Below, one piece after another: positions 30,401 to 51,492 of a stretch of DNA of 64,000 nt; within the stretch, counting starts at the first letter, position 1; each line of letters starts with the position of its first letter. Both the position numbers and the translations under genes were made by a program. The notes under the pieces are model-generated. The model searched no databases. It was given only the letters and a program-made list of their open reading frames with translations, and had not been told where the DNA came from. This DNA comes from Hormiphora californensis (taxonomy: Eukaryota > Animalia > Ctenophora): NCBI GenBank assembly GCA_020137815.1, contig CM035353.1, forward strand, positions 5,394,001 to 5,458,000. The letters are read 5' to 3'.

Positions 30401-32844
30401 AAATAGGGCGTTAAAGTGGAAAAAAAGAAATCCATCTCAGGAATTTTTGTGGTTATTCACCTTCATGTCCTCTTCAAATCCCCAAATTTTCATGCTCCTA
30501 TCTTTAGAAAAAAAATTTTGAGATGCCAAAAACGTATTTACAGGACATTTTTTAAACAGCTGTAGCAAAAATATGAATTCGACTTAAGGGCTAAAATTGC
30601 ATATTTGAGGTCTCCTTGGTATGGCCTACAACCCTACGGTGAGAGATTTCCCTGCACTCGAAAAAAAATTTCGGTCGGCGTACCCTTAACTGACCAAACA
30701 AGAGTTTTCAACAATCTGTATCACTGGAAACTTTTTCAATTTACGTTATTTATCCTAAACCTGTCAGGCCAATATGCTCTGACAGTCCTAAACAGCTTCT
30801 TTGCAGTATGTCAGTTTTGGACGAGAGAATTACAACGATCAAAGATAGTCGACCTATTTCAGAAAGCTCAATTGTCAAGAAGGTATATAATGTTGCCTAG
30901 CTAGACTGTCTGGGTTTGAACTAAACAATACAATGCACTAAGTAATGGACCATTGACATTCCCGATGATTATAACAATTTTTTCGTTAACTAATAATTAT
31001 TTTTCCTGACAGTATGCAGGTTCCAGCGTACCACTCAAATTGGCGGGAAAGGGAGAAGCGAGGTGATGCACTGTATTCACCCGTCGCCCTAAGCCCAATT
31101 CAAAGTGGCCTGTTTAGTCCAGATTTTGTGATGGAGGAGGATGAACTGACCTGCCACATATAGAAAACAACTCAACCCTGACAGGTTACTATAGATGCAC
31201 ATGCATAGATACATAATATAGATGCACATGTAGATACATAATACAGTCGGACCCCGATTTAACGGCACCCTCGGGGGAAAGGGTTTTGTCCGTTAAATCG
31301 GGGTGTCCGCTAAATCGGGGTCAAATACTGTTGATTTTCTATATCGGGGGAAGATTATGCTGCCGTTAAATCGGGGTGCCGCTAAATCGGGGGCCGTTAA
31401 ATCGGGGTCCGACTGTATATATTTATCATATTTAGTGTGTGTAATAACATTTGATCATGGTTGCAGTTAATTAGATCGCGTTATGAGGACATGGCCATAC
31501 ATCGTATACCAGTACCAGCTTGTCTAAAAAACCAGTTTATGTCAATCAGATATTGTGGGGAAACAGTCGTGCCAGAACCTCAAGTTCAGGCCACGGATAT
31601 TTCCCCCAGTGTGTTTAGTATCTGTAAGAGCTCACAATATTTAACAGGTTTAAGAAGATGGTTGAGGAGTCGGGAGGAGATATGGAATTCCGACAGGCCA
31701 TGAGCAAGATCCCCGCCGAGAAAAAGAAGAAAGTGGGATATACTGGCAAGCAATCTGTTATTGGTAGGTACAATATGGGGACTCACATACATGTATAATC
31801 CACCCCTATTATAGGTTGTCTTATTTTTGATCAAATCATGTGTGTGATTGAATACCATGTCGAAAGGGTAGATCGACTAAGTTGAGGCAAATATCATGTG
31901 TGTGTGAACTGTGTGATTGAACATCGAATGGTTTTTGTTGTTATGTGTGCCTCCCACTTCCAAACCCACGGCTGCTTCTTGGTCCAGTGAATGGTGCCAT
32001 GATACTACATTAACCTTTCGCCCAATGTAGAGATGCAACTGAATACCAAGACCAGGAACATCAGCGAAAAGGTAGCCAAGGTTCGGGAGGAAACGAATTA
32101 TAGGCCGAAATCAGAAGAAGACTCAGAGTACGAAAAATATTGCACAGATCATTCACAAGTCTGGTGAGGGGAACAAGTTTCTTGAGGAGGTTTGTACTTA
32201 AATAAGTTTATTAAATCTAGCACACTTTGTTGATGTATTAAATAAACGCATCACATTTAACACACTACTTTACTGTTTTTTATAGGTTCGAGCACTGCGT
32301 CAATTTGCCTCGCTGTGTAACTGCAAGTATCTGAGAACAGACCCTGAGCGGCTACAAGAACGGAAAGATGGGTACATGGACGAACTTATGGGAAATGTCA
32401 CCCGTAGGATAAAAATTAGGTAATTCTGGGTAATGGGACCAATAGATTACATTTGACTGAGAACTAGTCGCTATAATCTAGGAGAGCTCATTCAGTTGGA
32501 CCAACAACAACAATATGATATCTCTTTTGTAATAACCCGGTGAGAATTGTGGGTTGATTTCTTTACACTGATGAGATCGCAAGATCGAAACATTTGTTTG
32601 TAAACCAGCGTGTTTCTATTTGTTGTACTATCTGCTCTCGGTTCCACGCCGATAGAGCTCTCTTGTGGCCTACTGAAACAACCATATTGGGTTGATTTCT
32701 TACCAAGATCTTAGAAAATGTTGTAACCCGAATATATTGACCTACAGGAAACGATGGGAGGCAGGATTGAGCAAGATGAGTTTTCTGGGTGCCAGTAATA
32801 CTACTCTCAATCTACCTATAATAACACAGGCTACTGCAGAGTAG
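24427..32844 (+). CDS. Orphan multi-exon gene, charged/low-complexity protein of unknown function
   Basis: Phase-consistent exons 24427-24482 (MPESVILPPISREGVVAR), 24867-25071, 26321-26462, 26880-27061, 27162-27241, 27349-27596, 27711-27864, 30768-30882. Less certain exons near 31013, 31123, 31467, 31649 and 32031 (a few apparent indels). Then 32286-32419 and 32748-32844 (RKRWEAGLSKMSFLG...ATAE*). Confidence 0.75.
24500..24845 (+). repeat. 16-17-bp minisatellite (GTGAAATGTAAGGAGT)n in intron 1
   Basis: About 20 degenerate units. Duplicate at 16745-17085; reverse-complement array at about 26520-26745. Confidence 0.92.
27922..29312. mobile_element. Non-autonomous foldback DNA transposon, Kolobok-like (TTAA target site, GG...CC ends)
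   Basis: TTAA|GGGTACGCTAACC...GGTTAGCGTACCC|TTAA with ~600-bp inverted arms and a ~190-bp spacer. TTAA targets with RR..YY termini are the Kolobok signature; piggyBac would begin with CCC. Confidence 0.85.
29317..30685. mobile_element. Second copy of the Kolobok-like foldback element, in tandem and sharing a TTAA
   Basis: TTAA|GGGTACGC(GTACGC)CGACCGAAAT...ATTTCGGTCGGCGTACCC|TTAA. The right arm has a ~30-bp deletion near 30440. Confidence 0.85.
31244..31415. mobile_element. Complete CAGTCGGACCC MITE with TA target duplication
   Basis: TA|CAGTCGGACCCCGATTTAACGG...CCGTTAAATCGGGGTCCGACTG|TA, with internal repeats of TAAATCGGGG. Confidence 0.88.
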
Positions 32845-34034
32845 ATCATGGTGGTCGTGTGATGTTGATGTTCTAGTGGTCCCCAGTTCCGCCGTTCCAG
32901 AGGAAGGATGTATCAACGAGTGGGGTCTGGTTGTGGCTTCCTTTCTTCTTTTCTCCTCATCTAACCTGCCACATATATAAAAAAGAATGAAGATGTTGAT
33001 GGCGGTTGGGTCGCTCACGCGCTGAGCATTGCTCAGTGAGCAGTGTACAATGCTGGAAATTGCTATTCCAGTTATAATATATTAGGTTGTTATAAGTCTT
33101 GCTTGAAAAAGATTACAACAATGTTTCAATTTTGGGAATAATCCTGCGGTTCTGAAGTGATCGCGTGATTCGGAGCTATAAAGAGTGTAAATTTGAACCT
33201 GCTGATATAATGTACGAGTAAAACGTTGTGTTTTTCAAACTAAAGCTCTTTAATTTAGATTCAATTTTTAAAAGACAATGTGTTGTGAAAGCTTTTTTAA
33301 AAACCGAAGTCCGAACCACAAAATCAAATGAGAAGGATTATCCGGCGGAACAGAGTTAATTTGTCATCTCCCCAAGCTGGAGACACACCCGGTAGGTTAT
33401 ATACTGGGTACTGGGTACGCTAGTCTATTATTAACCTGCTAGATGAGATAGAGACTTAATTCCAGCACCTACCCCGGACCCCCACTAATCCGAGAGCGCT
33501 TCACACTTTGGCCGGTACCCTCTTCTTCGTTTCGTCCTAGAAATACATTGCTTCGGGAGCGACAGTTTTTCTTGGTGGTTCTAGGGATTATAGTGATTTG
33601 CTGGAGTGGTTGTTAAGGGAGAGAGAGAGATAGAGGGGGAGGGAGAGATACAGAGATGCCAGATCAGAGGTATATCTAGGAGACGTTTAGGAATAAGCAC
33701 TCTTTTTTTCCCCAGATGCTCTTTGCCTGAATTATGATTTTCATGTAAGATCAAAGCTGTAATTGCGATGATTTCTCAAGGCTGCGGTACATGTTCTATA
33801 GATTTGTATTCTGTATAGTATCAGTTTCATAGTTGCTTTACACTCGACCTGTTATAGAGTTGCACACACAGCTCCAAGTGCTGTACACAGATCGTGATAA
33901 CACTATTGTCATCTCGCGTGGGAGATCTCTGATCAGAACTCCCTCTCTCTCTCTCTCTCTCTCTCCACCCCTCTATCTCCACTGTGCAGAGACCTTTTTA
34001 CACTTTTCTTTTAGTTTATACTGTTTTCATTTTG

Positions 34035-35170
34035 ATTACTCGTTCGTTACGTTGCAGTTCGTTTCACTTTTGCTTGTCTCAGACACCAATAAGGGCTCTT
34101 CCTCTCACTAAAATGCAACTTAAATCCGTCTCAAATACCCATTTCTAGCACACATGAACTCCCAGTTACCACTGAACTGTCTCTCGGACCTGGCCTAGTC
34201 TCATCACTAAATTACAGCTACATTCTTGGCCAATATTGACCAAAACTTTGGAATTTCGCATTTAATTCAAATTGGGAAACTTTGTACTTTGCCATTACGT
34301 GTTTGATAAAGGAGCACTAACAAGTCACAGAGCAGAATTCTATTCATTACTCGTTCGTTACGTTGCAGTTCGTTTCACTTTTGCTTGTCTCAGACACCAA
34401 TAAGGGCTCTTCCTCTCACTAAAATGTAACTTAAATCCGTCTCAAATACCCATTTCTAGCACACATGAACTCCCAGTTACCACTGAACTGTCTCTCGGAC
34501 CTGGCCTAGTCTCATCACTAAATTACAGCTACATTCTTGGCCAATATTGACCAAAACTTTGGAATTTCGCATTTAATTCAAATTGGGAAACTTTGTACTT
34601 TGCCATTACGTGTTTGATAAAGGAGCACTAACAAGTCACAGAGCAGAATTCTATTCATTACTCGTTCGTTACGTTGCAGTTCGTTTCACTTTTGCTTGTC
34701 TCAGACACCAATAAGGGCTCTTCCTCTCACTAAAATGCAACTTAAATCCGTCTCAAATACCCATTTCTAGCACACATGAACTCCCAGTTACCACTGAACT
34801 GTCTCTCGGACCTGGCCTAGTCTCATCACTAAATTACAGCTACATTCTTGGCCAATATTGACCAAAACTTTGGAATTTCGCATTTAATTCAAATTGGGAA
34901 ACTTTGTACTTTGCCATTACGTGTTTGATAAAGGAGCACTAACAAGTCACAGAGCAGAATTCTATTCATTACTCGTTCGTTACGTTGCAGTTCGTTTCAC
35001 TTTTGCTTGTCTCAGACACCAATAAGGGCTCTTCCTCTCACTAAAATGCAACTTAAATCCGTCTCAAATACCCATTTCTAGCACACATGAACTCCCAGTT
35101 AACACTGAACTGTCTCTCGGACCTGGCCTAGTCTCATCACTAAATTACAGCTACATTCTTGGCCAATATT
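34035..35170 (+). repeat. 311-bp tandem repeat, about 3.6 near-identical copies
   Basis: Unit starts (ATTACTCGTTCGTTACGTTGCAG) at 34035, 34346, 34657 and 34968. Confidence 0.96.
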
Positions 35171-35587
35171 ACCCACCGCCCCACCCCCACCCGCCCTCCC
35201 CCACCCACCTCTCCCAATATAGCGGACATTGCTATACACCACACTACAGAGACAATCCTGGTGTTTTGGTGCACTAAGTCGCTTATCGCGTGTAACAACT
35301 AACAAATGTTCTTATCTGTCCCATCCGCATAGTATTCTAGAACATTTTACAGTATATTGGTGCTACATTCAGTCCTACCCCTTATCTGTGTTCAATCGTG
35401 TTTGTTTATCTTCATCTCCGATCCACTGGAAATGCATATACCTCTCATCTCATCATCAACAACATCACGGTACCAATCATCCATCAAAATTCTGTAAGTT
35501 CACCTGTCCGTATTGTCTGTTCACAGATTGTGTAAAGTTTATATTGTGAATGTAATTTACTATTCAAAACACGGTAAACATCGGGAT

Positions 35588-35745
35588 TCCAGACCCAAAC
35601 TCAAGAAATTCTCAAAGGCAAAACGTTACCGTGTTCCAGACCAAACTAAACTCAAGACACTCTCAAAGGCAAAACGTTACCTTGATCCAGACTAAACCAA
35701 ACTCAAGACTCTCTCAAAGGCAAAACGTTACCTTGTTCCAGACTC
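35588..35745 (+). repeat. About 50-bp tandem repeat x3
   Basis: Recurring AAACTCAAGA..CTCAAAGGCAAAACGTTACC..TCCAGAC. Confidence 0.85.
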
Positions 35746-37620
35746 AGAAGCTGACAGGACATAAAGCTTGCGTGAGAGTGCCCGAATACAGACCACAAAC
35801 AGTTAGAATATCAGAGAAATTTTGTTTGATTTTGGTGTAATTTTGAGCGTGATATTTTAGCTACTATCTTTCATACAGACCACAGACTTTATGACAGGTT
35901 GCAACACCGTTCTGTCGTGCGGCAGAGTTTGGTACGCTATAACCTAGAGCCACACACACACACACACACTGTTTTCATTTGGCCCCGATTCAAATGAACT
36001 TTGAAATTCTTTAAAATGAATCCTATAAACAGTTCACAGAATTGAGAGATCATGGATAAATTTGATTTACAGAGACTCTTTATTCCTTTATACCTTAATT
36101 ACATGGGCATTCGTCATTTAATTTGCTCGACGCTTCATGAAGCTTAACATCCTTTCTTTTACCCTTGCAGCGACTCTGCAATTCATCCCTCATTTGGTCG
36201 TGTAACGTTGTGTGTGTGTGTGTGTGTACGTGTGTGTGTGTGGCTCTAGGTTATATAGCGTACCAAGAGCCACATACACAACATGACCATATTGTTCTGT
36301 TTGAAATGTTTTTGTTTGTTATTTTGTTATTAATGGAGTGGATTATGGTGTGAGACAAGAAGCTAGTTGTGAAGCAGTATTAGGAAATTAGGTCATGATG
36401 AACTATATTATGAAACCATGCACATTACACAATTAATGATACGTCAGAGCAGTTTCCTGACATATCAGATCCTGCTTCCTGATTCTTGAACTGTAATCCG
36501 CTGTGTTATATTCCCACGGTAAAACAGACATTGGAACATACCCCCAATCTATTGCTAGGAAGATATATGGCTTCAAAAAGCTATGGAGGAGGAGGAGCTA
36601 GAGGTGGATCAGGAAGAATCAAAAAGGAAAAGTTATCAAAGGTAGGATTCAATCCTTGATTTACACTTTCCATTTGGGCAGCCTGTCTATATCCTGTGTT
36701 GACTCCCCTGGGAAGAGTAATGTGTGTTTTAAACCAATATTTACTCACTCGATAAAAATGTTCGTAACCAAAAGACTTGTGTCCATTCAATTAATCAATG
36801 CAATACCATGGTATCTTTTTCATTTCTTCAGTATTTCTGGAATCCGATAGCTGTTGTATAGCGCTGAAAAAGAGACAAATTTTGCACTAAATCGGCTTTC
36901 TGGCCAGTGCCACATATAGATATTAGATACGATTCCAAACTAAAACATTTGTTGTAGTTGCAGTTATTATCTGTCAGGCCAATGCTCTGACTACAGTTCT
37001 CGCGCGAATGGGTCAGGCCAATGCTCTGGGTCATATAAAAATGTGTATGACGGACAGGTTAATATACGAACTGTGCATGATATCTTTCTTGCCAAATAAC
37101 GCCATACGAGTGCATTGGTATTTTATTTCTAGCAAATATAAAATACTCATATTAATAATACAGGGCGTGAAATTAAGTGTCGTTCCTGAATGTATAATTT
37201 CCTGAATTCTGCAACTAAATTATCCATTTTCAAAGGCCGCAGTTGCATTGTTTCAAACTTTATTATTCATCATGTCCAATATTATATTCCTCCTTTTCCC
37301 GATCCAGAAACTCATCTACCATGCAGCTCACCGTGAAAGATCGATCTTGTCTGGCGTCGCCCGAACCCGTTTTTATTCTCGAACGGTGTGCACACTGCAC
37401 AGTTCGGGTCAACTAGGCCACCAGACAATGTATGCAGATTTCCCGTGACCGCACTAAAGACAATTAGCAGTATGCCCTCTGACTGTCCATTGTTCCATAG
37501 ATCAGGGATAAGATTCTCTGGGTATTATTATACTCAGCTGCATGCTATACAAGAGCTATATGCATAACACAATAAGTTGACGTCTAGATCCCATACACAG
37601 GAAATCTTTCTCTCGTCTCA

Positions 37621-37693
<73 letters not shown>

Positions 37694-37852
37694 AACTCTC
37701 TCTACCGGCTCATCTCTAGCTGTCCACCATTTGCTCCACATGTATAATTACTTCCCCCTCCTTCAACAGCAGCAGCTCTACTCTCCGTGCTAATAGCTGT
37801 TCAGCACGAGATCTAGAGTTTGGAAACTGCATATACGTTACATCACACTTAA

Positions 37853-39162
37853 GGGTACACCTGGCGTTTTTCATCATCGAGTGCCCAACCAAATGACTTC
37901 ACCAGGGTTTAGGCCATACAAAATGAACCTCAAATATGCAATTTTAGCCCTAAATTCGAATTCATATTTTTGCTACAGCCTATTTTCAAAGTGGCGTTTT
38001 TTCAATTTTTTTGGAATTTTTAACCTCAGGACCACTTTTTTTGAGATAGAAACATTTAATTCTTGGAATTTGAAGAGAATATAAAGGTGAATAAGCCCAA
38101 AGAAGGATTTTTGAAATGGAGCTTATTTCTGGCCATGAGAACGGTTTACTTTTTTGCTTCTTTGACACGCTGGCTGAGAATGTTCCCATGCTTCATTAGA
38201 GATGAAAATCTGGAAATAGTTGCTCCAAACGATTATCTATGTGGCCCAAAAATTTTGGAACTTTCCCGCCAAAGATGCGGTGTACAGAGCTTGTTTTGTG
38301 AAACCCGTCTTTTTGAAAAAGAGGGAAATTCCCTGTATCTCAAAAACGGATGATCGTAGAGACCTGCAGGGACCAAGCTTAATCGATTCAGAAGGTCCGA
38401 TTTTGGGGGGTCTTCTGAGAGACATTTTGCTCCTACTCCAACCGTTTTTGCTCTAATTGCAAAAACCCATTTCTATGAAAAGGGGGAACAACTCTATTCC
38501 AGTAGCCTGCTTCGGGCTGATTTCCCCCTTACTTGCTGATACCCTTTTCGCAATTACAGCAAAAACGGTTGGAGTAGGAGCAAAATGTCTCTCAGAAGAC
38601 CCCCCCCCCCCAAAATCGGACCTTCTGAATCGATTAAGCTTGGTCCCAGGTCTCTACGATCATCCGTTTTTGAGATACAGGGAATTTCCCTCTTTTTCAA
38701 AAAGACAGGTTTCACAAAAAAAACTCTGTACACCACATCTTTGGCGGGAAAGTTCCAAAATTTTTGGGCCACATAGATAATCGTTTTGAGCAACTATTTC
38801 CAGATTTTCATCTCTAATGAAGCATGGGAACATTCTCAGCCAGCGTGTCAAAGAAGCAAAAAAGTAAACCGTTCTCATGGCCAGAAATAAGCTCCATTTC
38901 AAAAATCCTTCTTTGGGCTTATTCACCTTTATATTCTCTTCAAATTCCAAGAATTTAATGTTTCTATCTCAAAAAAAAGTGGTCCTGAGGTTAAAAATTT
39001 CAACAAAAATTGAAAAAACGCCACTTTGAAAATAGGCTGTAGCAAAAATATGAATTCGACTTTAGGGCTAAAATTGCATATTTGAGGTCCATTTTGTATG
39101 GCCTAAACCCTGGTGAAGTCATTTGGTTGGGCACTCGATGATGAAAAACGCCAGGTGTACCC
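37853..39162. mobile_element. Related Kolobok-like foldback element (different subfamily)
   Basis: TTAA|GGGTACACCTGGCG...CGCCAGGTGTACCC|TTAA with ~610-bp arms. Shares blocks with 27922-30685 (CCTCAAATATGCAATTTTAGCCCT; GATTCAGAAGGTCCGATTTTGGGGGG). Confidence 0.87.
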
Positions 39163-41734
39163 TTAATATACATGATGGAAGTTCGGTTCCTTTCTATATG
39201 AAGTGTTCAGGAAGTCTGCTAGTACATTTACAAGGCTATTGATGTGACGTGTTATAGTATATACGTGGGAAAGCCGGAACTATGGGCAGAAGCTTTTGTA
39301 ATTGTATTTTGCCATACTGAAGATTCGCAGCTATGTTTTCCTTGAACTGCTTTCCTTGATCTGTCTACGGTAATTTTGATATATCACCAATGACAAGTTT
39401 CATTTCATCAACGCGACATGCTATAGTTTGCTCCGTTAATTAGCCGTAATTTAGTATCTCTCAGAAATAGTTTAGATCATGCCATAATTCGGAAGACTGA
39501 AAAATTGAGTCTAATAAATCTAAATGTATACCAAACATTCTCTAAAATCAGTTTATCTGCAAGATTATGTACCCGAGAATTCAGAATTAGTATAATTATT
39601 GTTACTTTGCGTGCTTCTCTCTTCTTGCTTACATTAATATCATCATAATTACCATGATCATAATATATGAAACACATATGCACCGTCGCTCAACCGCACG
39701 GCCGATGCTTGTAGTATATAATTTGCTAGGATTGATTTCCTGCTTATGCAGCCTCGGACTTGATCGATATTATTATCAGAGCACCAATGAGATATTAGAC
39801 ATAAACTTAGATGAAATTAAACTTTTATAATGTTGCTACCGGCACTCGAATTATACCTTTATTCACCTCGATCATTCGATTTTGAGGAGATTTTGTTTTC
39901 CAAATCCCCTTTAAGATTAAAGGGTTTAAAAACCGCTTAAATGACGTTTATAAGGGTGAATAAAGGGGCCGTGAAAAAGTCACACGTTAAAAAAAATAGA
40001 GTTTTGGGAGATATGAAAGGGAGAGACTGAGAGAAAGAACAGGAGAGAAAAGAGAAAGAAGAAGGGAAGACAAGAGAGATGAGAGAGCGGAGAGGAGAGA
40101 AGATAGAGAATTATAGTGAGCAGTACTTCTAAATGCGCTCCCGTATTACCTCCTCATTTTGCTTTATTAAGAGTCTCTAGACTCGAGACGCATCTCTCAT
40201 CCTCTACTCTATCCACCGTCGCTCGTTATTCTTTGGATGCAATTCATTCGCCGAGAAATTAGATTAGGGACAGAGAGAAGAAGAGAGGGCAGAACAGAGA
40301 CCAGGAGTATAAAGAAGTATCATGATTGGGAGTTAGAGTAGAGAGAGTAGAAAGGTAGCGAGATAAAAGACTGAGAAAAACGTTGATCCGATGCTTTTGG
40401 GTTAATGATGCAGGTAAAGGGGAAAGACCATGTCGACCCTATTGCACCTGGTTCACGCTCAGCTAATAAGCTAAGGAAATCTCTGAATCCTGTTTCTGCA
40501 GATCAGAGAAGGGAGAATGTCGATTCCTATTCGCACCGGGACCCAGCTCAGAGGATGAGGTTAATATAATGTAAAAATTTCCCTCCAAGAGATGATAAGA
40601 TCTGTTACATTAATCTAAGCTCATAAATTTTAATAGATTAATTGAGTCAATTATCATAAATTTTAAATATCATGTGTCAAATTGAACTTATAATATTGGT
40701 CAAATATAGAATTTAAAAATACATGTTGTCATTGAAAAAGATATAGCGATATATGTTAGCATTTATTGCTTTATAAAATAAAGCTTTCATGTATCGCCTA
40801 CATTAAGTTACAATACTGATCTCTTCTCAAATCAAAAACTGGCCTAATTAAAGAACGCCTTATAGGGGCTTGTTTTCAGGTTTTATATAATGGCCCCATT
40901 TGGCACCATTGTACAGTGGAACAAGGCGAATGCAGGTTTATTATGCATGGAATATGCACATTTTCCAGAGAGACTACATTATGAAATAGAGGGAAAATAT
41001 CGGAAAAAAGAAGGGATGAGAAGAGAAGGGATACATCGCCCTAGAGCTGGGAGAGAGCCCTCTCTACTCGCTTCTCTCCGCTCCTCTCGCTCCTCTCTCC
41101 TCCTCGACTCTCTCTCTTCTTCTCTCTCTCTCCTGCTCTTCTGAGGTCGCGGCGCCGGCTCTTCGCCGCGGCATGGCTCCGCGGCCTCTCCGAGCCTCGC
41201 GCGCGCGGGGTTTCTATGGTTGGCCCAGACTCCAATCAGTCGCCTCTTTGATCGTACAGCGTTCCTTTGATCCTGCTCTCTCTTATCTCTCTTCGGCTGC
41301 TCTCCCCTCTCACTTTCAAATCTCTCCTTTTTTAGCTCTTCCCTGACGCAATCTAGCAGTGTGGTGGAGCGAATAGAGAAAGAGAGACTTGGCCTGGCTT
41401 CTCTCATACTTATAAGCTTGTCCTTGGTCCTCTCCTCCTCCCTAGAATAGCTCCCATTTGAACCACAAGATGTGTAGTCTTCGCAGATGGAGCTTGCTGC
41501 AGTTGGTACTTGGTGCACTCGTCCCTATCCTCCAATGCAGTTCGCTCATGGGGCTGCAATTTTGCAGTTGGAGCATAGGATTTAAGCAGCCAGTACTATT
41601 ACCCCTTTCCTTGCTGTATTATACTAGGAACGTATACATATATATAATACAGGAAACGCATCTGATCCTCCCCATGTTTTATAGTTTGTCACCTGTACCA
41701 TTTTAATTTACAAGCTGGGTACTTTTTAGGAACT

Positions 41735-41810
<76 letters not shown>

Positions 41811-43949
41811 ACCTCCATCACAACCTTTCCCAATATCCGTCTCCCCTTTGTTGTATTAATAAAATACGTAGGGTGAAATCAGAAATCTGAAACAATTCAA
41901 CTCGAGCTTGATATGAAGCAGAGCGGCATCACACATGCTGTTTCTTGGATTCCTTCCATGTCTACTTTAGATGTGGCAGTCAGCTATTATAATAACCCTG
42001 TGATGCGTAACTGTATATGTTATCATAGCGCTGGCAAGCGCCCGGGGCCCAATCCTCCCTCCCCTCAACCATCCTTCCATTTTCCAAGCATTCTTGCTTC
42101 CATTGAATGGAAAATCGAAATTGCGAAAAAAAAAATTTTTGAATTTTTTGAAAATTTTTGAAAATTTTGACAGCGCTACTATACTTATTGTCTGAAATCG
42201 GCAATTTCAACTTTGTTTTAGACAACCTTCCCGTTGTCCTACGAACTTGTCGCTTGGTAGTTCGTGTTGCCTTGACACATAGAGCACACGTTCAAAATTT
42301 CATGCAAATCGGAGTTACGGTTTTTACGTTACAGAGGGTCGTATTTTAGACAAAATGTCCGTTTTTCGCGTCACGAACGACCGTAAAATAACCACTTTTT
42401 TGCGTACACAATAGAGGCCACAGTTTTAAAGCTATCACCATGAAACTTTGGGAGTCGGTAGGTCTACTGGTGTACCTTGTATTAAAGCTTGGACAGAGAA
42501 AACGGACAGTCATAACAAAAGTTATGACTGTCTTAAGTTTTCTTTGGCGTTTAAGACGGCCTTCCCGTCGTTCTACCAATACGCCGCTTGGTACGCGGTG
42601 TTGCCTTGACATCTTGAACACACGTTCAAGCAAATCCGAGTTGCGGTTCGTCAGTTACGGGTATCTGACTGTATTAAGATTTAAGACGATTTTCAAAAAA
42701 ACCTCGAAAAGAGCAAATTAAACTACAAATCATGATTTTATCATATATATTTTGCCAAAGTATGCCAACTGCTGTATTTTCAGGTATAATTGGTAGTCAT
42801 ATCTAGATTTATGACTGTCTTAAATTTAAGACGATTTTAAAAAAACCTAGAAAGAAGCGATTCAGAGTCTAAATTAACATTGAATCAGATTTATTTTATA
42901 AAATTAGGTTTATTGCCGCATTTTCAGTTACAATTGGTAGTCATATCTAGAGTTATGACTGTCTTAAATATACGACGATTTTAAAAATCACTGAGAAAAG
43001 AGCGAATTAGCACCTAGAACCTGATTATATCAGATATATCTGATTATCAATGCTTATCCGTGCGATAATTATCCGTGACTAATAATCAAAATCATAGAAC
43101 AATCGCGGAGAACCAATCGCGAATATATCAAATGCTGCCCTGCCAGAAATAGATGGTCCATATAGGTCAATATTAGCTCAATTAACGGGGCTATATCGTG
43201 CAAAATTACATTGTGGATTGGGCGATTTATTGATCAATACAGGTCCGTATTGTGCCCAATATATTGGCCAAATTGAGCAATATACCGTGGAATATATTGA
43301 ACAAATGTGGTCCAAATGCGCGCGCATCCGTGGTGCTGAAACGTTGTACTCTCAACATCTCAAATACTGTGCGCGCTCCCGTACCATGAGGAGCGGCGTC
43401 CCAAAATACGCTGGCCGACTGCTGCACCCAATAACGATTTGAAACCAACGTTATACTTGTTACTTTCGTAACCCTCGCTCACGCAAGCCGGCTCAGCGTT
43501 TACAAAAGAGGGTCGCGCAATCTGACAACGTTATACGAACCAATTGTCGTATGCACTTACCGAGTGTAGGAAAACTTCCACTTACTGAAAATTGTACTTG
43601 CCATGTTCGAACCTCTCTTCCCCTAATGGAATAAAAGTTTTTATTTGGATGTAGTTCTTGTTTAATTGGTTGCTGTGTGTTTGTTAGAAATGTGGTAAAG
43701 AAGCACATAATATGATATATAATATATACATATACAGTCGGACCACGATTTAACGGCACCTTGGGGAACATTTTTGTCCGTGTTAAATCATACTTTGGGA
43801 TGACTGCGAGAGTAATGGGGGATCCAAGCGTAAGAACTGCACATCTCATGAGTTTCCCCAAAACAACATACACTATAGAATTGTTTTGGTTCACACCACG
43901 AGCTTTATTGGTCGTCTGCAAAAACAACATGACGTACAAACGTACGTAC

Positions 43950-45638
43950 CCTTTGCTGATGTTCTAATGGTCATTGCCTGTCTGTACCCCGATAATACTG
44001 AAGAATCCACAATCTCTCCCAGAATAGTCTGGAGCAGTGACCACCGTGACATTCAATATCTTGGAGATAACTTTGTTTTAATTTCAGACAACTGACAACA
44101 AGTCATAAGATCTGTATTGGTAGGTCACGTGACTGGTTCTATCAACCATGCAGGGAAGTATTTCCTGTAACCAGGCAGCTCCTTTAGCTTAAGCCTGTCT
44201 CGAATGATGTTATCAAGTTCTTGGTGAAAGACACGATCTAGCTCCAAACCGCATTACCCAGTGATGAGAAGATCTGAGAGGCTACGCCAGACAGACACGG
44301 ACATCTAGCAGTTGGTTGGGCCTGAAATCGCTGGATGGAGTGGATAATTAGCTAACCATGGTAACCTGGACCCGCGCAACATTAGCACTTGTTTGGGCTG
44401 GAGGGGAGTGGGAAGTGGCTAGTTGAGTGTCTACATCCATGGTACGTCAAATGTGTAACACCATGAGATCACATTGTTGATAATCCAATGGTATAACAAT
44501 GTACCACACAATGGTCAACACACAGGGTAAACAATGGATACACAATGCGTAACACATGTTAAACAACCTGCACCTGTGTAACACCAATAATTACCTCAGG
44601 TGTAAAAAGTAGTACAATACGTCATTGCCCCTCCAGGTTCAACTCCCCGAAAACACATAATCAGAACAACTTAGGGTGAGCAGTTGACGAGAAATATACA
44701 ACCTGAATAGAGAGATAGAAGTAAACAACCCACAATCACTCGTTATTTAGGTCACCACTCGTCATCAGCCATCCCAGTCCCAGACGCGCTTAGAAAGCTG
44801 ACTTATACTTTTCAGAGTGTTGCGATACCCCGGGCAATGCACACGAAGATGGTAACCCCATGCAATAACGAGGACAGTTATAACAAGGGTCGGGTTAAAG
44901 TCCCTATTCCGATAGTTTGTTTTTTTATGCCGAAGTCCATTGAGTACCTCCACAAAACGAGCTGGGTAGTGCGATGACCTAGACGTGACCCACACAGTAA
45001 CCAAGCAAACATTCCGAATCTTATTTACGGTCCGGTATTTTTTGTCACCCAACATGGACCAATATTTCTTCTACTCTCTCACCAGTAAAAACTGTGTCCT
45101 GTCTGTATCTCATCAGAGCAGGTATGGTTGGCTCAGGGGGTCAGCCACGGTAATGGATCAACAAATGACTCAATAAGATCGTCAGGAGATATCGGATTTA
45201 ATAACACACCCATCGGAACTTGTATTTTAGGTCACGTGAATGGTTTATCACCCAATCAGGGTCCGTATTTCATGGCACATACCTTATGATCCACATTATT
45301 ATCATAGTTGTAGTAGAGCAACATAAAGCACACACTGCCATAGTACACCCCCACAGTCCACACCAACCAACGCCTGTGGATGTGCATGCGAGAAGGGGAG
45401 GATTAGAGTCAGGCACGCGACCGAAACAAGTAAACGAACCAATCAGACTCGTTTATTAAGGTCACGTGACTGGTTATCAGCCAATCAGGGACCAGTATCG
45501 GGGTACACAGATATAGTCATATGTACCTTCATAGAGCCAGTTCACCTCTATTAAAGTGGTTCTCAATGGCCAGTTCTAAACAGAAGAGAGGTAGTCCCTC
45601 TACCAGTACCATCACGATGTATGGAACAGGAAGGCGCG
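43950..45638 (-). pseudogene. SLC6: Captured SLC6 (neurotransmitter:sodium symporter) gene fragment, TM2-TM7, with introns
   Basis: Exons in correct order: 45638-45527 AFL/PYIVMVLVEGLPLFCLELAI (TM2); 45373-45283 CFMLLYYN/MIIMWII (TM3); ~45185-45030 LIESFVDPLPWLT (EL2); ~44979-44808 FNPTLVITVLVIAW/TIFVCIARGIAT (TM4); 44702-44595 VVYFSST...LEGAM...FTPE (TM5); ~44330-44195 (TM6); ~44070-43950 (TM7). Many indels; no TM1 or TM8-12 seen. Confidence 0.88.
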
Positions 45639-46399
45639 CTGATAAAATGAAAGGGAGTACATGGATGTTCTAGGTTGGTTAAATATCAAAAAACTGGTAA
45701 AAATTACAGACTTTATTAAATAAGGGTGACAAAAGCCAACAACCCGCACACCTAAAGTGAAAATGGTGAGCACGCCACTGTTACCTTCAATAGTAACCTC
45801 TGTTCGTTAAAACGGTGAAACTAGCCCCTGAGGGTTGAGATAAATTGCCCATAGTATCTGGTGTTATCTACAACTGCTTTGTTGTTACTGATATCGTCCA
45901 CTATGATAACATGTGCTATAGAGATTACATAGGACGAATTAGGAAAGGGAAATTTTTTAATTGGTGTTTTGAAGGATGTCATATATGTACAATTATAACA
46001 CCACGGATATTGTTAAAAAATGATTGTGTTCATAGGAAAATGTGTTTTGAGACTCTTGAGACCAGAACAAAAGCTCCAGAGACTGAGCACGCAGATTATA
46101 CTTCATAGAAATATATATATTGTAGAAAAAAAACAAGGACTATGCAAAAACACTTCCAGTTCAACAGTGCACAAATCCTCTCCAACACTCAATTTACCAC
46201 TGGTAACGTAAACCCAGTAATACAATACAACTTATAATTATAGCTAGATAGTAGATTATTATATTCGTTATACATATTCGTTATACATCATATAATAAAC
46301 AACCGGCAACCATTAACCATTTAACAGCTTAATGGTCAAGCATATTAACACGACGGAATATGCAACTGTTCAAATTGGAAAGCAGGGAGCAAAGCTCCC

Positions 46400-47540
46400 A
46401 ACCTTACTGTAATCTCCAGGTGAAAACCTCTTGGTTACAACATAGCTCATAAGCCCATGAGGCACAAAAGGCTCGCCTTTAACTTTCAAACAAACCAGGA
46501 AGAGTTTGTCAAGCTTTAAAAATATTCCGATAACCTTTCAAAACATTGTCTTTGTGGCTATAAATGAAGCTATCGCATTCTTTTTCCACAGATAGCGGAA
46601 ATTTCCGACTTCTACCTCTTGAAGTGGAGTAGATGTGGAATAGCCAAGCTGATTCAGCAGGGGAGTTGTTGGGATTATTTTGCCCCCTTTGAATCTGGCG
46701 GTGGAGAGGCTCGGAGGGCAGGTGACAGCGGGTTGATTGCTCTCACAAACCTCTCCAGTTTTTCAGTTGCCTCCAAACGGTTGAGCCCCATGGCAATTTG
46801 GGCCCACATCATTCGTTCCTGAAGAAAAGATATTTTTATCTCAAGTTAGCTACGTGTTCGTTCCACCATTAAAATAGCGAAATGAATCATATAATCCCGT
46901 AGATCATCAAATAGGCGAAAAAGTCAGATCAAACCCGGATTTTCCATTGCAGTGATCTGAACATATATTATATAATAATCATACCATGGAAGAGAGATAT
47001 TAAGACCTGTTTCTTGATTCAAAAGGGCCATTGTAGTATATGCCTGGGAACCACTTTCTCTAACTGGAGTCCGGAATGTGAACCTGAAAGGGAATGGATT
47101 CGTTAAAAAGATTTCGTAGAATTTCCTGGTAATGGTGATAACTATAGTTATTATAGCCCCTAATTTTTGGGGCAATTATACCATTATACCATTTGGTGGA
47201 GGTTAAAAGTGCATACTTTTCAGTGTAGATGTTTGGTACACTGTCACAAACTCGTGCAAGTATTTCGCCCTGTCTAATCCCTTCTGTCCACAGTATCCCT
47301 GAAACGATTCTTTCGGGTGACATACGTCTCTCTTTCTCTCTATCTGGTATATCGCGCGACTGGCAAGAGTTTATAGCCCATTATATTATCTTTTCATACT
47401 TACATCGACAACAGCACCAGTGATTAACCAGCAGCAAGCCAATGCCTTCCAACCGAAATGGAAACCTTCACGGATCTGTTTCTTGAGCTTCATCAGTGAG
47501 GCCGGGATAACGTAGAAGATGAATTGACACCATTCACGGG
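46400..47540 (-). pseudogene. Degenerate, spliced C-terminal half of a CACTA/EnSpm transposase
   Basis: Exon 47540-47404 encodes AREWCQFIFYVIPASLMKL (cf. the KAxEWxxFLLYxxPxxL motif). Exon ~47298-47217: LDRAKYL/EFV/SVPNIYTEK. Exon ~47083-46985: VRESGSQAYTTM/PFESRNR/ISLFHG. Exon from 46819: GTNDV/QIAMGLNRL (cf. FPFESxNxxLxxLFHGTxxxxxQIA). Several frameshifts. Confidence 0.75.
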
Positions 47541-47604
47541 CTGAAATAAAAACGTGTTTTCTAAAATATAAAAGACTATGCCTAAATTTTTGTTAACTGG
47601 TCAT

Positions 47605-47955
47605 CGGCCAGCTAGGTACCCACGTGTCTGGTCTGCGGCAGCCTCTCAGATCTTCTACTCACTGGGTATCGGGTTTGGAGCTAGATCGTGTCTTTCACCA
47701 AGAACTGGTGATACATCATTCGAGACAGGTTAGCAAAGGAGCTGCCGGATTCAGGAAATACTTGTCCCTGATTGGTTGATAACCAGTCACGTGACCTAAA
47801 TACAGATTTCTGATTGGTTGTCAGTTTCTGAAATTAAAACAAGTTCCTCCCTATCATTATCACGGTGGTCAACTGCTCCACGACTATTCTGGAGGACTTG
47901 TGATTTTCAGTATTATCGGGTACAGACAGGCAATGACACATGTAGAAATCAGCAA
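47605..47955 (+). pseudogene. SLC6: Inverted second copy of the SLC6 TM6 and TM7 exons inside the right arm
   Basis: 47626-47679 reads VWSAAASQIFYSLGIGFG (SLC6 TM6 signature). About 47850-47955 reads IIITVVNCSTTIL/GLVIFSIIGYRQAMTHVEISK, followed by a GT donor. Confidence 0.9.
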
Positions 47956-49060
47956 GGTACGTACGTTGTACGTCATGTTTTGCCTAGATCGACCCAATAA
48001 AGCTCGTGGTTTGACACAAACAATCTATAGTTTATTGTTTTCTGGGGAACTCATAGATTTGCAGTTCTTAACTCTTGCATCCCCATTACTCTCCAGTCTC
48101 CCCCAATTATGATTTAACGGACAAAACCCTTTTCCCCAAGGGTGCCGTTAAATCGTGGTCCGACTTATATGTATATATTATATATCATATTATGTGCTTC
48201 TTTACCACATTTCTACAAAAACCCACAGCAACCAATTAAACAAGAACACATCCAAATAAAAACTTTTATCCATTAGGGGAAGAGAGGTTCGAACATGGCA
48301 AGTACAATTTTCAGTAAGTGGAAGTTTTCCTACACTCGGTAATGCATACGACAATTGGTTCGTATAACGTTGTCAGATTGCGCGACCCTCTTTTGTAAAC
48401 GCTGAGCCGGCTTGCGTGAGCGAGGGTTACGAAAGTAACAAGTATAACGTTGGTTTCAAATCGTTATTGGGTGCACAGTCGGCCAGCGTATTTTGGGACG
48501 CCGCTCCTCATGGTACGGGAGCGCGCACACAGTATTTGAGAGTTGAGAGTACAACGTTTCAGCACCACGGATGCGCCGCGCATTTGGACCACATTTGTTC
48601 AATATATTCCACGGTATATTGCTCAATTTGGCCATATATTGGGCCAAATACGACCTGTATTGATCAATAAATCGCCCAATCCACAATGTAATTTGTGCAC
48701 GATATATGCCCCGTTAATTGAGCTAATATTGACCTATATGGACCACCTATTTCTGGCAGGGTGATAACTAATCAATAATAGTAATCGCGGATAACTAACC
48801 ACGATAACTTATCGCGAATAGCTAATCGCGATAGCTTATAATACTTATAACGGATTCGTGATCAGCTATCCGCGATTGGTTATCAGTGATTACTATAATA
48901 TATTAGATATTCGCAATTGATATCCGAAATTGGATTTCTGCGATTATTATGAGGCAACCTACGATTGAAAAAGTCCGTGAATCCCCAATCGTTTAATCGC
49001 GTTTATTAAATACAGCTAGTATTACAAAATGCATGTCGTAGTATAACAAAATGCCTGATA

Positions 49061-49511
49061 CTAGATCCAAAAACCAAACAAGTTTGGTGGATAGCCGGGG
49101 CCGCATAAATTAAAAAACGTGCGAAAGTTTTGATACATGAACTTTCGGGGCCTGGGGTGCTGTTAAATTCGTGTTTCCATGATATAATAGTCAGCCGTTC
49201 ATTCAAAGCATACTATTATTCTGTAAAACAGACTCTGGAACGACCCAATGGCCACTGTGCGCAGTACATTATATGTGACATGTGTTGATCTGTATGTTTG
49301 ATTATGCGGAATAAAAAATAATGATAATTTGATCATTGCGAAAGTTTCCTAATTCCTAGCGTATAGTTTGAAAATGTTGCTGGTTATAATCATGGAAACG
49401 CGAATTTAACAGCACCCCAGGCCCCGAAAGTTCATGTATCAAAACTTTCGCACGTTTTTTAATTTATGCGGCCCCGGCTATCCACCAAACTTGTTTGGTT
49501 TTTGGATCTAG
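49061..49511. mobile_element. MITE with ~125-bp TIRs and TA target duplication
   Basis: TA|CTAGATCCAAAAACCAAACAAGTTTGG...CCAAACTTGTTTGGTTTTTGGATCTAG|TA. Confidence 0.85.
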
Positions 49512-51492
49512 TACTGTCTTTCATAAACGCCACAAAATGGTGATCAGCTCCTCTTTCGGTGTAACACCTTTGCATTCAAATGATGCTCTAATCGATCCGT
49601 ATCCCTTCCGTTCGATTGATTAACGATTGATATCAATTGTTAATCAATCGTAAATCAATCGAACGTCGAACTAAATTTTAGTAGGGTACCTGTCCATATC
49701 CATGCCTGTTCTCTACCACGACTGAATTATTGATCTTTCCCTTTTTCAAGCGATTTTTTTCAAGAGAAAAATTGTTTGACTATCAATCTTCCACTGTCTT
49801 CACCACAACTTGCTTAGAAAACCGCAAAATATGATGTGAGGTTTCCCCTGAGATCTTTACTTTGTCTGCCGCGGATTGTGGCTAAACCGAGAACAGATAA
49901 TTTTAAGATTTTTAGGATACGAACATCGTTTTCGACTTTTCGGCTCCGTCGTTAAGTTACGTCTAACCATGAAGAACTCATTCCTGTCTGTGTTCCTCGG
50001 ATCTAAATCATATTGATATTTTTTGACAGGGTGTAATAAGTTTCTGTGTACTCCGCCATGGATAGTAATGACCGTGTGTGTATATTTAATTGACTCTCCC
50101 CCCCCCCCCACCTTCATTGTGTACGCTGGCCTCTCTCCACCTGCTATAATAGCTGTCTAATATCAGGGTAGATCGATCTCCAGAGAGAGAGAGAGAGTGG
50201 AAGTTAGCACATGTGCCATCATTTGTTGCAGTGTCTTATCTCTCGGTATTATAGTAACTGGTGGTAGTTGCGTAGAGCATCGCTATATCATTAGTCTTAT
50301 GTACTACTTTTGAAATTTTACAAAAGATTAAAATCAATTTTATAGAAGTTTGTTTATCTTCCATTCTACTGTGCAACAATTGTGTGTATACAATTCAGAT
50401 TACCTAAGGTCCACTTACTAAATTACAAAATTGCTCTCATGTACACACCAATTGTTGCAAACCACACACATGGCTGCGATCTAATTTCGCCATGGCAAAT
50501 TAAACATTTATTGCAGTATCTTAGCAGCTTTGTGTAGCATCTCACCACTGTTATAGTACATAATATCTTATTGAGGTACTAGTAGTAGGTATATCTTATG
50601 TTTATTTGTAGGTGATACATTAAACTTCTTACATCAACTTGATGAAACTTCATGGTCCTCGATAAGCAATTTTTGGTGACATGTTGACACCTGTGTGCGT
50701 GCTGCACTGAGATCCAGCTCTCGCCTCTCACATATGTTAATAAAAAAGTAGTAGTAGGCATGGTGCCATCATGATCATGAAGGTACATTATTTTGGGCAA
50801 ATGATTCTGAAATATGTTCATAAGGTTTGAACGACTGCAAGGTTTTTGATTAACTGTTTTCTCTTTAGATTTTTCATCTGGATTTTTATAGTCTGTGTAA
50901 ACAGCAACAATTTGATGTTATAGTCATTGATCCAAACACCTGTTCTAGTATCGAGCAACGATTTGAGAGAGAGGCGGCTCATGAGCGAGTGTATACACTT
51001 CCTTTAGGGGTGGTAGATACTATTATTAGAGATTTGTTACATACCGTCTATGAGCCAGAGTTGTATGCCAGCCTACAACTCTGACTCATGGATTCTATGA
51101 GCCAGAGTTGCATGAGCCAGAGTTGTAGGTAATCATTTGTGCATACCATTTTTCAACTTCATACTATATAAGTATTGATTGATACGCTTCGACCCTATAT
51201 TCTTTGTGCATCATTATACACAACAATACAAAGTATTGAGCGATTCTATTTCTGTCCAGAGATCTGTAGTTGCTCTCTTTTCCCCAACGTTCACAGTGTG
51301 ACACACACGAATAGAGAGAGGGAGAGCTATTGTACACTTTGTTGGGCACCCTCTATAAACAGTTTCTTCACAGACGCTTTAGAGAACCTTTGATAGCTAG
51401 ATCATCCTTGTACTTTGTGTCTGTATAATCATCCTTATATTTTGTGTCTGTATAATCATTCGTTTGAATTTGAAGTAAAAAGGAGCGTGAAG

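What the first reader, a model, noticed from the sequence alone, without database searches (positions are those of the whole stretch)
43138..48761. Pack-CACTA-like transposon carrying a multi-exon SLC6 transporter fragment
Seen: CCC...GGG ends, a TG target duplication, and a decayed transposase on the minus strand. Downstream of it on the same strand lie seven SLC6 exons (TM2 to TM7) in correct order with introns retained, which indicates DNA-level capture. Established: 2-bp TSDs with CCC or CAC ends typify animal EnSpm/CACTA elements; Pack-type gene capture is best known in plants; VWxxAAxQIFxSLGxGFG and YYNxIxxW are SLC6 signatures. Inference: this is an animal CACTA element mobilising part of an amino-acid/neurotransmitter transporter gene. 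None of it appears in the ORF track because of frameshifts.
Basis: partly seen in the sequence, partly recalled or inferred. Interest (0 to 1): 0.9.

Follow-up and report, generated by a model that had tools for sequence, protein, structure and literature searches.

The report
Gene-carrying cut-and-paste transposon, ctenophore genome
This 5.6-kb stretch is a real, precisely inserted, non-autonomous DNA transposon of the CACTA/Mirage group that carries seven exons, with their introns, of a neurotransmitter-type transporter gene; this kind of gene capture is well known in plants and rare but documented in animals.

Summary
Window 43138-48761 starts CCCTGCCAG, ends CTGGCAGGG and is flanked by TG/TG. 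Two uninterrupted paralogues of the surrounding host repeat carry a single TG, so this is a precise insertion with a 2-bp target duplication.

The genome holds exactly eight such termini, forming four elements flanked by TG, TT, GA and TA. Only the 34-kb copy on contig C10 encodes a transposase. It is a DDE enzyme nearest Pfam DUF1258 (Mirage) and Transposase_21 (CACTA).

The window copy keeps only the frameshifted C-terminal half of that gene (46295-47623, minus strand). Downstream on the same strand lie seven SLC6 exon blocks (TM2 to TM7) with splice sites and spacers retained. No TM1 or TM8-12 exon occurs anywhere in the window. The closest complete SLC6 gene lies on C10.

- The ends are 1.16-kb inverted arms, not short repeats. 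The right arm repeats the TM6-TM7 exons.
- The cargo also sits in both 2.5-kb near-identical inverted segments next to the termini of the transposase-bearing master.
- The termini are not CAC.
- The cargo segment is a diverged mosaic.

Verdict: a new member of a known kind. Long-read support and expression could not be tested.

The parts
42990..43137 (.). Left flank: part of a high-copy host repeat into which the element inserted. The last two bases (43136-43137, TG) are one copy of the target duplication.
   Evidence: At least 40 genomic matches at 89-96% identity. The uninterrupted paralogues L009 and L010 run straight on into the right flank.
43138..44299 (.). Left inverted arm. It begins CCCTGCCAG.
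   Evidence: Inverted match to 47623-48761, 90.4% over 1185 columns. The terminal 54 nt are 98% complementary (I7).
43138..43737 (.). Terminal 600 bp, 99-100% identical to the termini of the C10, C12 and C2 copies. It holds AATATATTG-type subterminal repeats and is the probable transposase-binding end.
   Evidence: identity. (three direct copies of a 16-nt motif plus inverted copies; weak evidence).
43946..44047 (-). SLC6 exon block 7 (TM7).
   Evidence: 79% DNA identity to L006 3831-3930. The copy in the right arm hits Pfam SNF 299-324.
44204..44321 (-). SLC6 exon block 6 (TM6, QIF.SLG motif), frameshifted here.
   Evidence: 77% to L006 4246-4371. Six-frame pieces.
44578..44713 (-). SLC6 exon block 5 (TM5).
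   Evidence: 76% to L006 4542-4678. tblastn match at 44586-44705.
44796..44907 (-). SLC6 exon block 4.
   Evidence: 81% to L006 5036-5142. tblastn match at 44806-44949.
45077..45186 (-). SLC6 exon block 3.
   Evidence: 78% to L006 5366-5474. tblastn match at 45082-45177.
45263..45406 (-). SLC6 exon block 2 (TM3, YYN motif), frameshifted.
   Evidence: 73% to L006 5709-5845. tblastn match at 45282-45377.
45410..45498 (.). Copy of an 87-89-bp, very high-copy, partly palindromic repeat (CACGTG core) in a cargo spacer. Partial copies lie at about 44122-44138, 45229-45261 and 47758-47802.
   Evidence: Dozens of 90-96% matches across all large contigs. Very high contig depth. Local map. None in the host gene L006.
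45524..45651 (-). SLC6 exon block 1 (TM2).
   Evidence: Pfam SNF 41-70, E 2e-4. 79% to L006 5986-6111.
46295..47623 (-). Decayed C-terminal half of the CMC/Mirage-like transposase gene (about residues 390-715 of full-length relatives, through the natural C-terminus). It is frameshifted, including a 1-bp indel just before the conserved FES motif that holds the catalytic E.
   Evidence: 96.8% identical by blastn (about 98% in the aligned bins) to C10:3842325-3843677. The C10 pieces align colinearly with the C-terminal halves of homologous transposases. P0152 residues 599-670 match 46349-46564 at E 2e-6.
47624..48761 (.). Right inverted arm. It ends CTGGCAGGG and is joined directly to the transposase remnant inside the TM6 exon.
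   Evidence: Junction sequence compared with both C10 partners (clean junction, 1-2 nt of microhomology).
47624..47734 (+). Second copy of the TM6 exon. Judging from the splice acceptor visible in the C10 arm, about its first 25-40 nt are missing.
   Evidence: Pfam SNF 247-269, E 1.8e-5. 20 of 20 residues identical to the host exon..
47832..47960 (+). Second copy of the TM7 exon, with its GTACGT donor site.
   Evidence: 84% to L006 3831-3962. tblastn match at 47891-47983. Sequence.
48762..48910 (.). Right flank: continuation of the same host repeat. The first two bases (TG) are the second copy of the target duplication.

Best explanation
Window 43138-48761 is one of four copies of a low-copy, recently mobile cut-and-paste DNA transposon of the CMC (CACTA/EnSpm-Mirage-Chapaev) group. 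The host is a ctenophore; I infer Hormiphora californensis from assembly size and protein clusters.

The family's only transposase gene lies in a 34-kb, roughly palindromic master copy at C10:3813975-3847919. On that copy's right side the order is transposase, then a seven-exon SLC6 fragment with introns on the same strand, then a 600-bp terminal region. The left side repeats the cargo and terminus in inverted orientation but has lost the transposase C-terminal half. The gene fragment therefore lies inside the element's long inverted repeats.

The window copy is a non-autonomous internal-deletion derivative. A single junction at 47623/47624 joins position 1162 of one arm to the middle of the transposase gene. 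This removes the catalytic N-terminal half. I infer that the copy would have to be moved in trans by the master's enzyme, acting on the shared termini and making a 2-bp staggered cut at the target.

Shown: the precise insertion, the 2-bp duplication, the copy structure, the type of transposase, the DNA-level nature of the cargo, and the absence of the rest of the SLC6 gene.

Inferred: trans-mobilisation, origin by abortive gap repair or fold-back, and that the cargo is currently non-functional.
For: 1. Termini and duplications. Exactly eight termini exist in the genome, and six are 100% identical over 123 bp. They pair into four elements flanked by TG/TG, TT/TT, GA/GA and TA/TA.
2. Empty sites. 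Paralogues of the host repeat carry a single TG. Short-read contigs of two samples show the same 5626-bp skip with 2 shared letters, most likely from those same paralogues.
3. Recent activity. The C10, C12 and C2 copies are 99.4-100% identical over 1.25 kb of arm.
4. Transposase exon 1 (405 aa, open). Pfam DUF1258 at 2e-5. 476 homologues at E<=1e-3, several of which hit Transposase_21 or DUF4218. D178, D265, C284-x2-C287 and H350 are conserved, and the FES glutamate lies in a downstream piece. PMC3985635 equates DUF1258 with Mirage and groups it with Transposase_21.
5. Window remnant. It equals the C-terminal half of that gene.
6. Cargo. Seven colinear exon blocks have spacers between them. 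TM1 and TM8-12 are absent from the 64-kb window and from the 36.5-kb C10 locus.
7. Second species. Contigs of a related organism hold the same terminus running into the TM7 exon, and the transposase half at about 97%. A Pleurobrachia bachei gene model (P0151) joins the transposase exon to the TM2 cargo exon.
Against: - The termini are CCC...GGG, whereas CMC-clade elements mostly end CA...TG (PMC12730594).
- The Pfam hits of the transposase are below the curated cut-offs (24.6 and 25.7 bits against 33.1).
- The first H of the H(3-4)H motif is replaced in this family.
- The 34-kb C10 locus is complex, with a nested insertion, satellites and tandem 100% duplicates of exon 1. It could be two damaged elements rather than one unit, and its TA/TA flanks alone are weak evidence.
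- The cargo segment 43738-46230 is only about 87% identical to the master, although both of its sides are 98-100% identical. That mosaic is not explained by simple deletion.
- No long reads, no RNA and no allele-level empty site were available; all runs were served as contigs.
- Contigs of run X1 give no depth on 43950-44549.
Confidence: 0.85

Rival explanations
1. The element belongs to another 2-bp-duplicating group (for example ISL2EU/PHIS) or to an unknown one. On this view the CMC transposase in the C10 locus is an unrelated passenger or neighbour.
For: The termini are not CAC. The transposase occurs only inside a messy 34-kb locus. Its Pfam scores are below threshold.
Against: The transposase C-terminal half is directly contiguous with the cargo and terminus in two separate loci, the window and C10. 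In the second species, a gene model links transposase exon 1 to the cargo exon. No PHIS-type or other transposase lies between any pair of termini. A 2-bp duplication is within the CMC range (PMC12730594, PMC6004678).
Confidence: 0.06
2. The structure is two events rather than one element. Either a truncated copy had a second partial copy land beside it in inverted orientation, or a local inverted duplication arose after insertion.
For: The two arms are only 90% identical. They resemble different lineages: the right arm is 97% identical to the other copies, while the inner part of the left arm is 80-92% identical.
Against: Empty-site paralogues show one TG and the outer ends carry matching TG copies, so the 5624-bp unit behaves as a single insertion. 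The C12 and C2 copies, and the C10 master, have the same two-identical-ends design. The inner junction is a single clean breakpoint. Mosaicism is better explained by conversion or template switching between copies.
Confidence: 0.05
3. It is a resident SLC6 pseudogene with a local inverted duplication, or an assembly artefact, and is not mobile.
For: Palindromic structures are a known assembly hazard. No long-read check was possible.
Against: Identical termini lie at four unlinked loci with different flanks and matching 2-bp duplications. There are precise empty-site paralogues. No TM1 or TM8-12 exon occurs in the window. Arms that differ by 10% are not what collapsed or chimeric assembly produces.
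Confidence: 0.02

Closest known systems
Turmoil-1 of Caenorhabditis elegans (PMC2572040)
   Same: An autonomous cut-and-paste element with unusually long inverted terminal repeats (760 bp). The repeats contain captured host gene fragments, including two exons and an intron of rsp-2. It is low copy, with one full-length copy plus fragments. The cargo is present at both ends.
   Different: Turmoil-1 is a Harbinger element with 3-bp duplications. Its cargo is 131-205 bp. Here the transposase is CMC/Mirage-like, the duplication is 2 bp, the cargo spans seven exons (about 1.7 kb), and the host is a ctenophore.
Pack-TIR elements of animals, including Ssk-FB4 of Drosophila (PMC8277862); Pack-MULE and Pack-CACTA of plants
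   Same: A TIR-bounded, duplication-flanked, non-autonomous element whose interior holds a host gene fragment with introns. A related host gene lies elsewhere and is not flanked by the element. Multiple copies arise by transposition. Like FB4, the ends are long inverted arms.
   Different: The same cargo also sits in the transposase-bearing master, and the window copy still holds half a transposase gene. It is therefore a deletion derivative of a cargo-bearing master rather than a cargo-only shell. Only one cargo is seen in the family. That paper does not mention ctenophores or CMC/EnSpm.
Mirage and CACTA/EnSpm transposons (CMC superfamily; Pfam DUF1258 and Transposase_21; PMC3985635, PMC12730594, PMC6004678)
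   Same: A DDE transposase with conserved D, D, C-x2-C, H and E positions. A 2-bp target duplication, as reported for animal CACTA-type elements. A multi-exon transposase gene.
   Different: The termini are CCC...GGG instead of CAC/CA...TG. The inverted repeats range from about 100 bp to 2.5 kb instead of tens of bp. The first H of the H(3-4)H motif is not conserved.

Membership tests
CMC (CACTA/EnSpm-Mirage-Chapaev) DNA transposons | Encodes, or derives from an element that encodes, a DDE transposase homologous to Transposase_21 or DUF1258. | tested here: met
   The master copy's exon 1 hits DUF1258 at 2e-5 and 1e-5 (below the cut-off). Its homologues hit Transposase_21 (one above the cut-off), DUF1258 and DUF4218. 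The window holds only the C-terminal half and no N-terminal catalytic part.
CMC (CACTA/EnSpm-Mirage-Chapaev) DNA transposons | [quoted passage not shown] | tested here: inconclusive
   C284-x2-C287 and H350 are conserved in the 13-sequence alignment. The first H of the H-x3-H pair is N in this family. The E lies in the FES motif of a downstream piece of the master. In the window copy a frameshift precedes that motif.
CMC (CACTA/EnSpm-Mirage-Chapaev) DNA transposons | Target-site duplication of 2-5 bp (2 bp in Mirage and many animal CACTA elements). | tested here: met
   TG, TT, GA and TA flank the four elements. Empty-site paralogues carry a single TG.
CMC (CACTA/EnSpm-Mirage-Chapaev) DNA transposons | Termini 5'-CAC(TA/TG) or at least CA...TG. 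| tested here: not met
   All eight termini read CCCTGCCAG...CTGGCAGGG. PMC12730594 says 'in most cases', so this feature is typical rather than absolute.
Pack-type (transduplicating) TIR element | TIRs and a duplication bound an internal host-gene fragment. A related host gene exists elsewhere and is not flanked by the element. | tested here: met
   The host gene at C10:5960136-5964802 has SNF matches from profile position 8 to 493 and no element termini near it. Donor status is unproven because only the exons align.
Pack-type (transduplicating) TIR element | Capture at DNA level (introns retained). | tested here: met
   Seven exon blocks are separated by 76-256-bp spacers at the positions of host introns. 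GT donor sites are retained.
Pack-type (transduplicating) TIR element | Non-autonomous shell without transposase sequence. | tested here: not met
   1.3 kb of transposase gene remains (46295-47623). The same cargo lies in the transposase-bearing master.
Resident SLC6 (SNF) transporter gene | Full set of TM1-TM12 exons at one locus. | tested here: not met
   Only the TM2-TM7 blocks are present. tblastn of all host-gene exon pieces finds nothing credible outside the element in 64 kb. The whole-genome SNF scan lists no hit in this window.
ISL2EU/PHIS elements (the other 2-bp duplicating group) | PIF/Harbinger-type DDE transposase. | tested here: not met
   The only transposase between the termini is CMC-type.

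The most novel reading that the evidence does not exclude
The SLC6 exons may be kept in the element's inverted arms because they act at the RNA level. One route is a hairpin or antisense transcript that yields small RNAs against host SLC6 mRNA. Another is exonised cargo spliced to the transposase transcript, as in the Pleurobrachia model P0151.

One observation fits this reading. Between the two diverged cargo versions, the exon blocks are 91.6% identical and the spacers 80.9% (p = 2.5e-10), while frameshifts are tolerated in both. That pattern fits nucleotide-level constraint, not protein-level constraint.

Against it: the window copy shares only one exact match of 21 nt or more with the host gene, whereas the master shares five. 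No RNA data were available.
Probability: 0.07. Interest if true: 0.75.

Novelty: new member of a known kind. Interest (0 to 1): 0.45.

Why it matters
Capture of multi-exon gene pieces by cut-and-paste transposons is a main route of exon shuffling in plants. In animals it is documented only sparsely (Turmoil-1, Pack-TIRs, Ssk-FB4).

This is a clean case with base-pair-exact boundaries in a ctenophore, an early-branching animal lineage. The putative master, three deletion derivatives and a related host gene are all visible in one genome, and the same element-cargo pairing occurs in a second species.

It offers three things:
- Material for studying how long inverted arms and fold-back derivatives form.
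- A candidate active CMC transposase from a ctenophore.
- A caution for annotation: SLC6 'gene fragments' and chimeric transposase-SLC6 gene models in these genomes are transposon cargo.

Tried and rejected
- Pfam on ten stop-free pieces of the supposed transposase region gave nothing. The region was identified only through the C10 master and its homologues.
- tblastn of 150 homologous transposases against the window at E<=1e-3 gave no hit. This shows the catalytic half is absent.
- I looked for a hypermutation signature in the diverged cargo. 35% of the 287 differences are transitions and there is no strand bias, so this was rejected.
- I tested whether the window's cargo is nearer to the host gene than the master's. 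It is the reverse, so recent conversion of the window copy by that host gene is rejected.
- I searched for TM1 and TM8-12 exons in the window and in the C10 locus. None were found.
- Reads: every run is served only as short contigs. Long-read spanning, allele-level empty sites, strand and expression could therefore not be judged. The one run guessed to be RNA laid nothing meaningful.
- Pfam on eight long ORFs at 40-62 kb found no neighbouring gene.
All searches were exon by exon or piece by piece, by reference.
- The only joined sequence was a 118-nt in-script concatenation of the two flanks, used to compare with empty-site paralogues.

Full report
**Observation**

The stretch begins CCCTGCCAG at 43138 and ends CTGGCAGGG at 48761, with TG on each side. 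The ends are not short repeats. 43138-44299 and 47624-48761 are inverted arms that are 90.4% identical.

Both flanks belong to one high-copy host repeat. Two uninterrupted paralogues of that repeat, at C5 near 14836 and C13 near 1010270, read straight through the insertion point with a single TG. The element is therefore a precise insertion with a 2-bp target duplication. Short-read contigs from two samples show the same 5626-bp skip with two shared letters. Because the flanks are repetitive, these contigs most likely come from the same paralogues and not from an empty allele.

**Copies in the genome**

The window is G000:C4:5394001-5458000. A 123-bp terminal probe finds exactly eight termini in the genome, six of them 100% identical. 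They pair into four elements:

| Element | Size | Flanks |
|---|---|---|
| This one, C4:5437138-5442761 | 5.6 kb | TG/TG |
| C12:5468529-5471671, near-perfect palindrome | 3.1 kb | TT/TT |
| C2:9286956-9288699, 98-bp left end | 1.7 kb | GA/GA |
| C10:3813975-3847919 | 33.9 kb | TA/TA |

Four matching dinucleotides out of four, with unrelated flanks, is what a 2-bp-duplicating transposon gives. The C10, C12 and C2 arms are 99.4-100% identical, so activity was recent.

**The transposase**

Only the C10 copy has one.

- *Exon 1.* It lies at C10:3840004-3841218 and is 405 codons with no stop. It hits Pfam DUF1258 at 2e-5, below the cut-off. It has 476 homologues at E<=1e-3, mostly 600-900 aa proteins. 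Several of these hit Transposase_21, DUF1258 and DUF4218. PMC3985635 states that DUF1258 is the Mirage group and a close relative of Transposase_21 (CACTA).
- *Catalytic residues.* In an alignment of 13 sequences, D178, D265, C284-x2-C287 and H350 are conserved. The first H of the H(3-4)H motif described in PMC12730594 is replaced.
- *C-terminal half.* Downstream pieces at C10:3842373-3843640 align colinearly with residues of about 390-715 of the homologues. They include the FES motif that carries the catalytic E.

Every search was piece by piece.

**What the window keeps of it**

46295-47623 on the minus strand is 97-98% identical to that C-terminal half. It is broken by frameshifts; one shifts the frame just before the FES motif. 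A full-length Pleurobrachia paralogue (P0152) matches 46349-46564 at E 2e-6.

Nothing in the window matches the N-terminal catalytic half, and Pfam alone sees nothing.

**The cargo**

Downstream on the same strand lie seven blocks colinear with exons of the SLC6 gene at C10:5960136-5964802. That gene has SNF matches from profile position 8 to 493.

- The blocks cover TM2 to TM7. Pfam SNF matches positions 41-70, 247-269 and 299-324.
- Spacers of 76-256 bp separate them, and donor sites such as AAG|GTACGT are kept. Capture was therefore at the DNA level.
- No TM1 or TM8-12 exon occurs in the 64-kb window or in 36.5 kb of the C10 locus.
- The right arm repeats the TM6 exon (lacking its first 25-40 nt) and the TM7 exon on the plus strand.

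**Architecture of the family**

In the C10 copy, the 2.5 kb next to each terminus, cargo included, is an inverted repeat at 99.96% identity. Transposase exon 1 also occurs in inverted copies there. The master is thus a degenerate giant palindrome. It carries a nested insertion, satellites and 100%-identical tandem duplicates.

The three short elements are internal deletions of such a palindrome, and all have two copies of the same end. In the window, the deletion junction is a single clean breakpoint at 47623/47624 with 1-2 nt of microhomology. This fits abortive gap repair or template switching; that step is inferred.

**Unexplained features**

1. *Mosaic identity.* The window copy is 100% identical to the master over 43138-43737 and about 98% over 46238-47623. 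It is only about 87% identical over the cargo, 43738-46230. The master also has an extra 1126 bp at 46293/46295.
2. *Distance from the host gene.* The window's cargo is further from the host gene than the master's is; one exon is 77.6% against 94.5%. There is no hypermutation signature.
3. *Exons against spacers.* Between the two cargo versions, exon blocks are 91.6% identical and spacers 80.9% (p = 2.5e-10). Yet both versions have frameshifts in exons. Possible causes are segment replacement in spacers, conversion from an unseen paralogue, or nucleotide-level constraint.
4. *Donor uncertain.* Host-gene introns do not align with the cargo spacers, and the 87-bp repeats in the spacers are absent from the host gene. 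The C10 gene is the closest relative, not a proven donor.

**Other species**

The genome is 110.7 Mb in 45 contigs. That fits the Hormiphora californensis assembly described in PMC8527503 (110 Mb, 44 scaffolds, 13 chromosomes). Cluster mates of the transposase are Pleurobrachia bachei proteins. The species assignment is my inference.

- Contigs from a second, related organism hold the same terminus running into the TM7 exon, and the transposase half at about 97%.
- The P. bachei model P0151 joins transposase exon 1 (93-94% identical) to the TM2 cargo exon.

The element-cargo pairing therefore predates the separation of these two lineages of the element, or else the element moved between the species.

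**Comparison with known systems**

It works like Turmoil-1 of C. elegans, where gene fragments lie inside long inverted terminal repeats of a low-copy autonomous element (PMC2572040). It also works like animal Pack-TIRs, including the fold-back-borne Ssk-FB4 (PMC8277862).

By transposase and duplication length it belongs to the CMC group (PMC12730594, PMC6004678). It departs in its CCC termini and very long inverted repeats. It is not a Pack shell in the strict sense, because transposase sequence remains and the master carries the same cargo.

**Limits**

All sequencing runs were available only as short contigs. Long-read support, allele-level empty sites and expression could therefore not be tested. 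Run X1 gave no depth on 43950-44549, while X5 covered much of the window-type cargo.

**Verdict**

It is a new member of a known kind, of moderate interest.

Noticed in passing
window 45410-45498; partial copies at 44122-44138, 45229-45261, 47758-47802; L003/L001 cargo spacers: An 87-89-bp, partly palindromic repeat with a CACGTG core and CCAAT-like flanks occurs at very high copy number on every large contig. In the master copy it sits in five cargo spacers, all in one orientation. It is absent from the introns of the related host SLC6 gene.
   Followed up: partly
window 42990-43137 and 48762-48910: The element is inserted into a copy of another high-copy repeat, with more than 100 first-look candidates genome-wide. 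That repeat supplied the paralogous empty sites.
   Followed up: partly
P0151 (Pleurobrachia bachei gene model, 514 aa): This predicted protein fuses the transposase's first exon, 20 residues of an unrelated repeat, and the SLC6 TM2 cargo exon, then reads on into the spacer. It is either a chimeric transcript or an annotation artefact caused by transposon cargo. The 20-residue repeat also occurs six times in window 27982-39102.
   Followed up: partly
G000:C10:3813975-3847919 (L001, L002, L007, L008, L003): The 34-kb master locus contains a 3.7-kb nested insertion with 409-bp inverted ends in its left arm, two satellite arrays, and 100%-identical tandem duplicates of the transposase exon-1 region. 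A further SLC6 TM6-like piece (SNF 239-265) lies beside those duplicates. An ion-channel ORF (Ion_trans) abuts the right terminus.
   Followed up: partly
G000:C2:8522004-8523575 (minus): An uninterrupted 562-codon frame matches the whole SNF profile (1-522, E 1e-169). This is an intronless SLC6 gene in a genome where the other SLC6 genes are split into many exons. It could be a retrogene or an acquired gene.
   Followed up: no
window 42691-42978: Two tandem 144-bp units, 76% identical, with related 22-33-nt motifs repeated upstream.
   Followed up: no
window 49059-49183 and 49389-49513: A 125-nt inverted repeat, 99% complementary, with 205 nt between the arms. It looks like a small hairpin-forming or MITE-like element just downstream of the transposon.
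   Followed up: no
window 41733-41819: A (CT)n microsatellite of about 85 bp, with related CT-rich tracts at 41061-41139.
   Followed up: no
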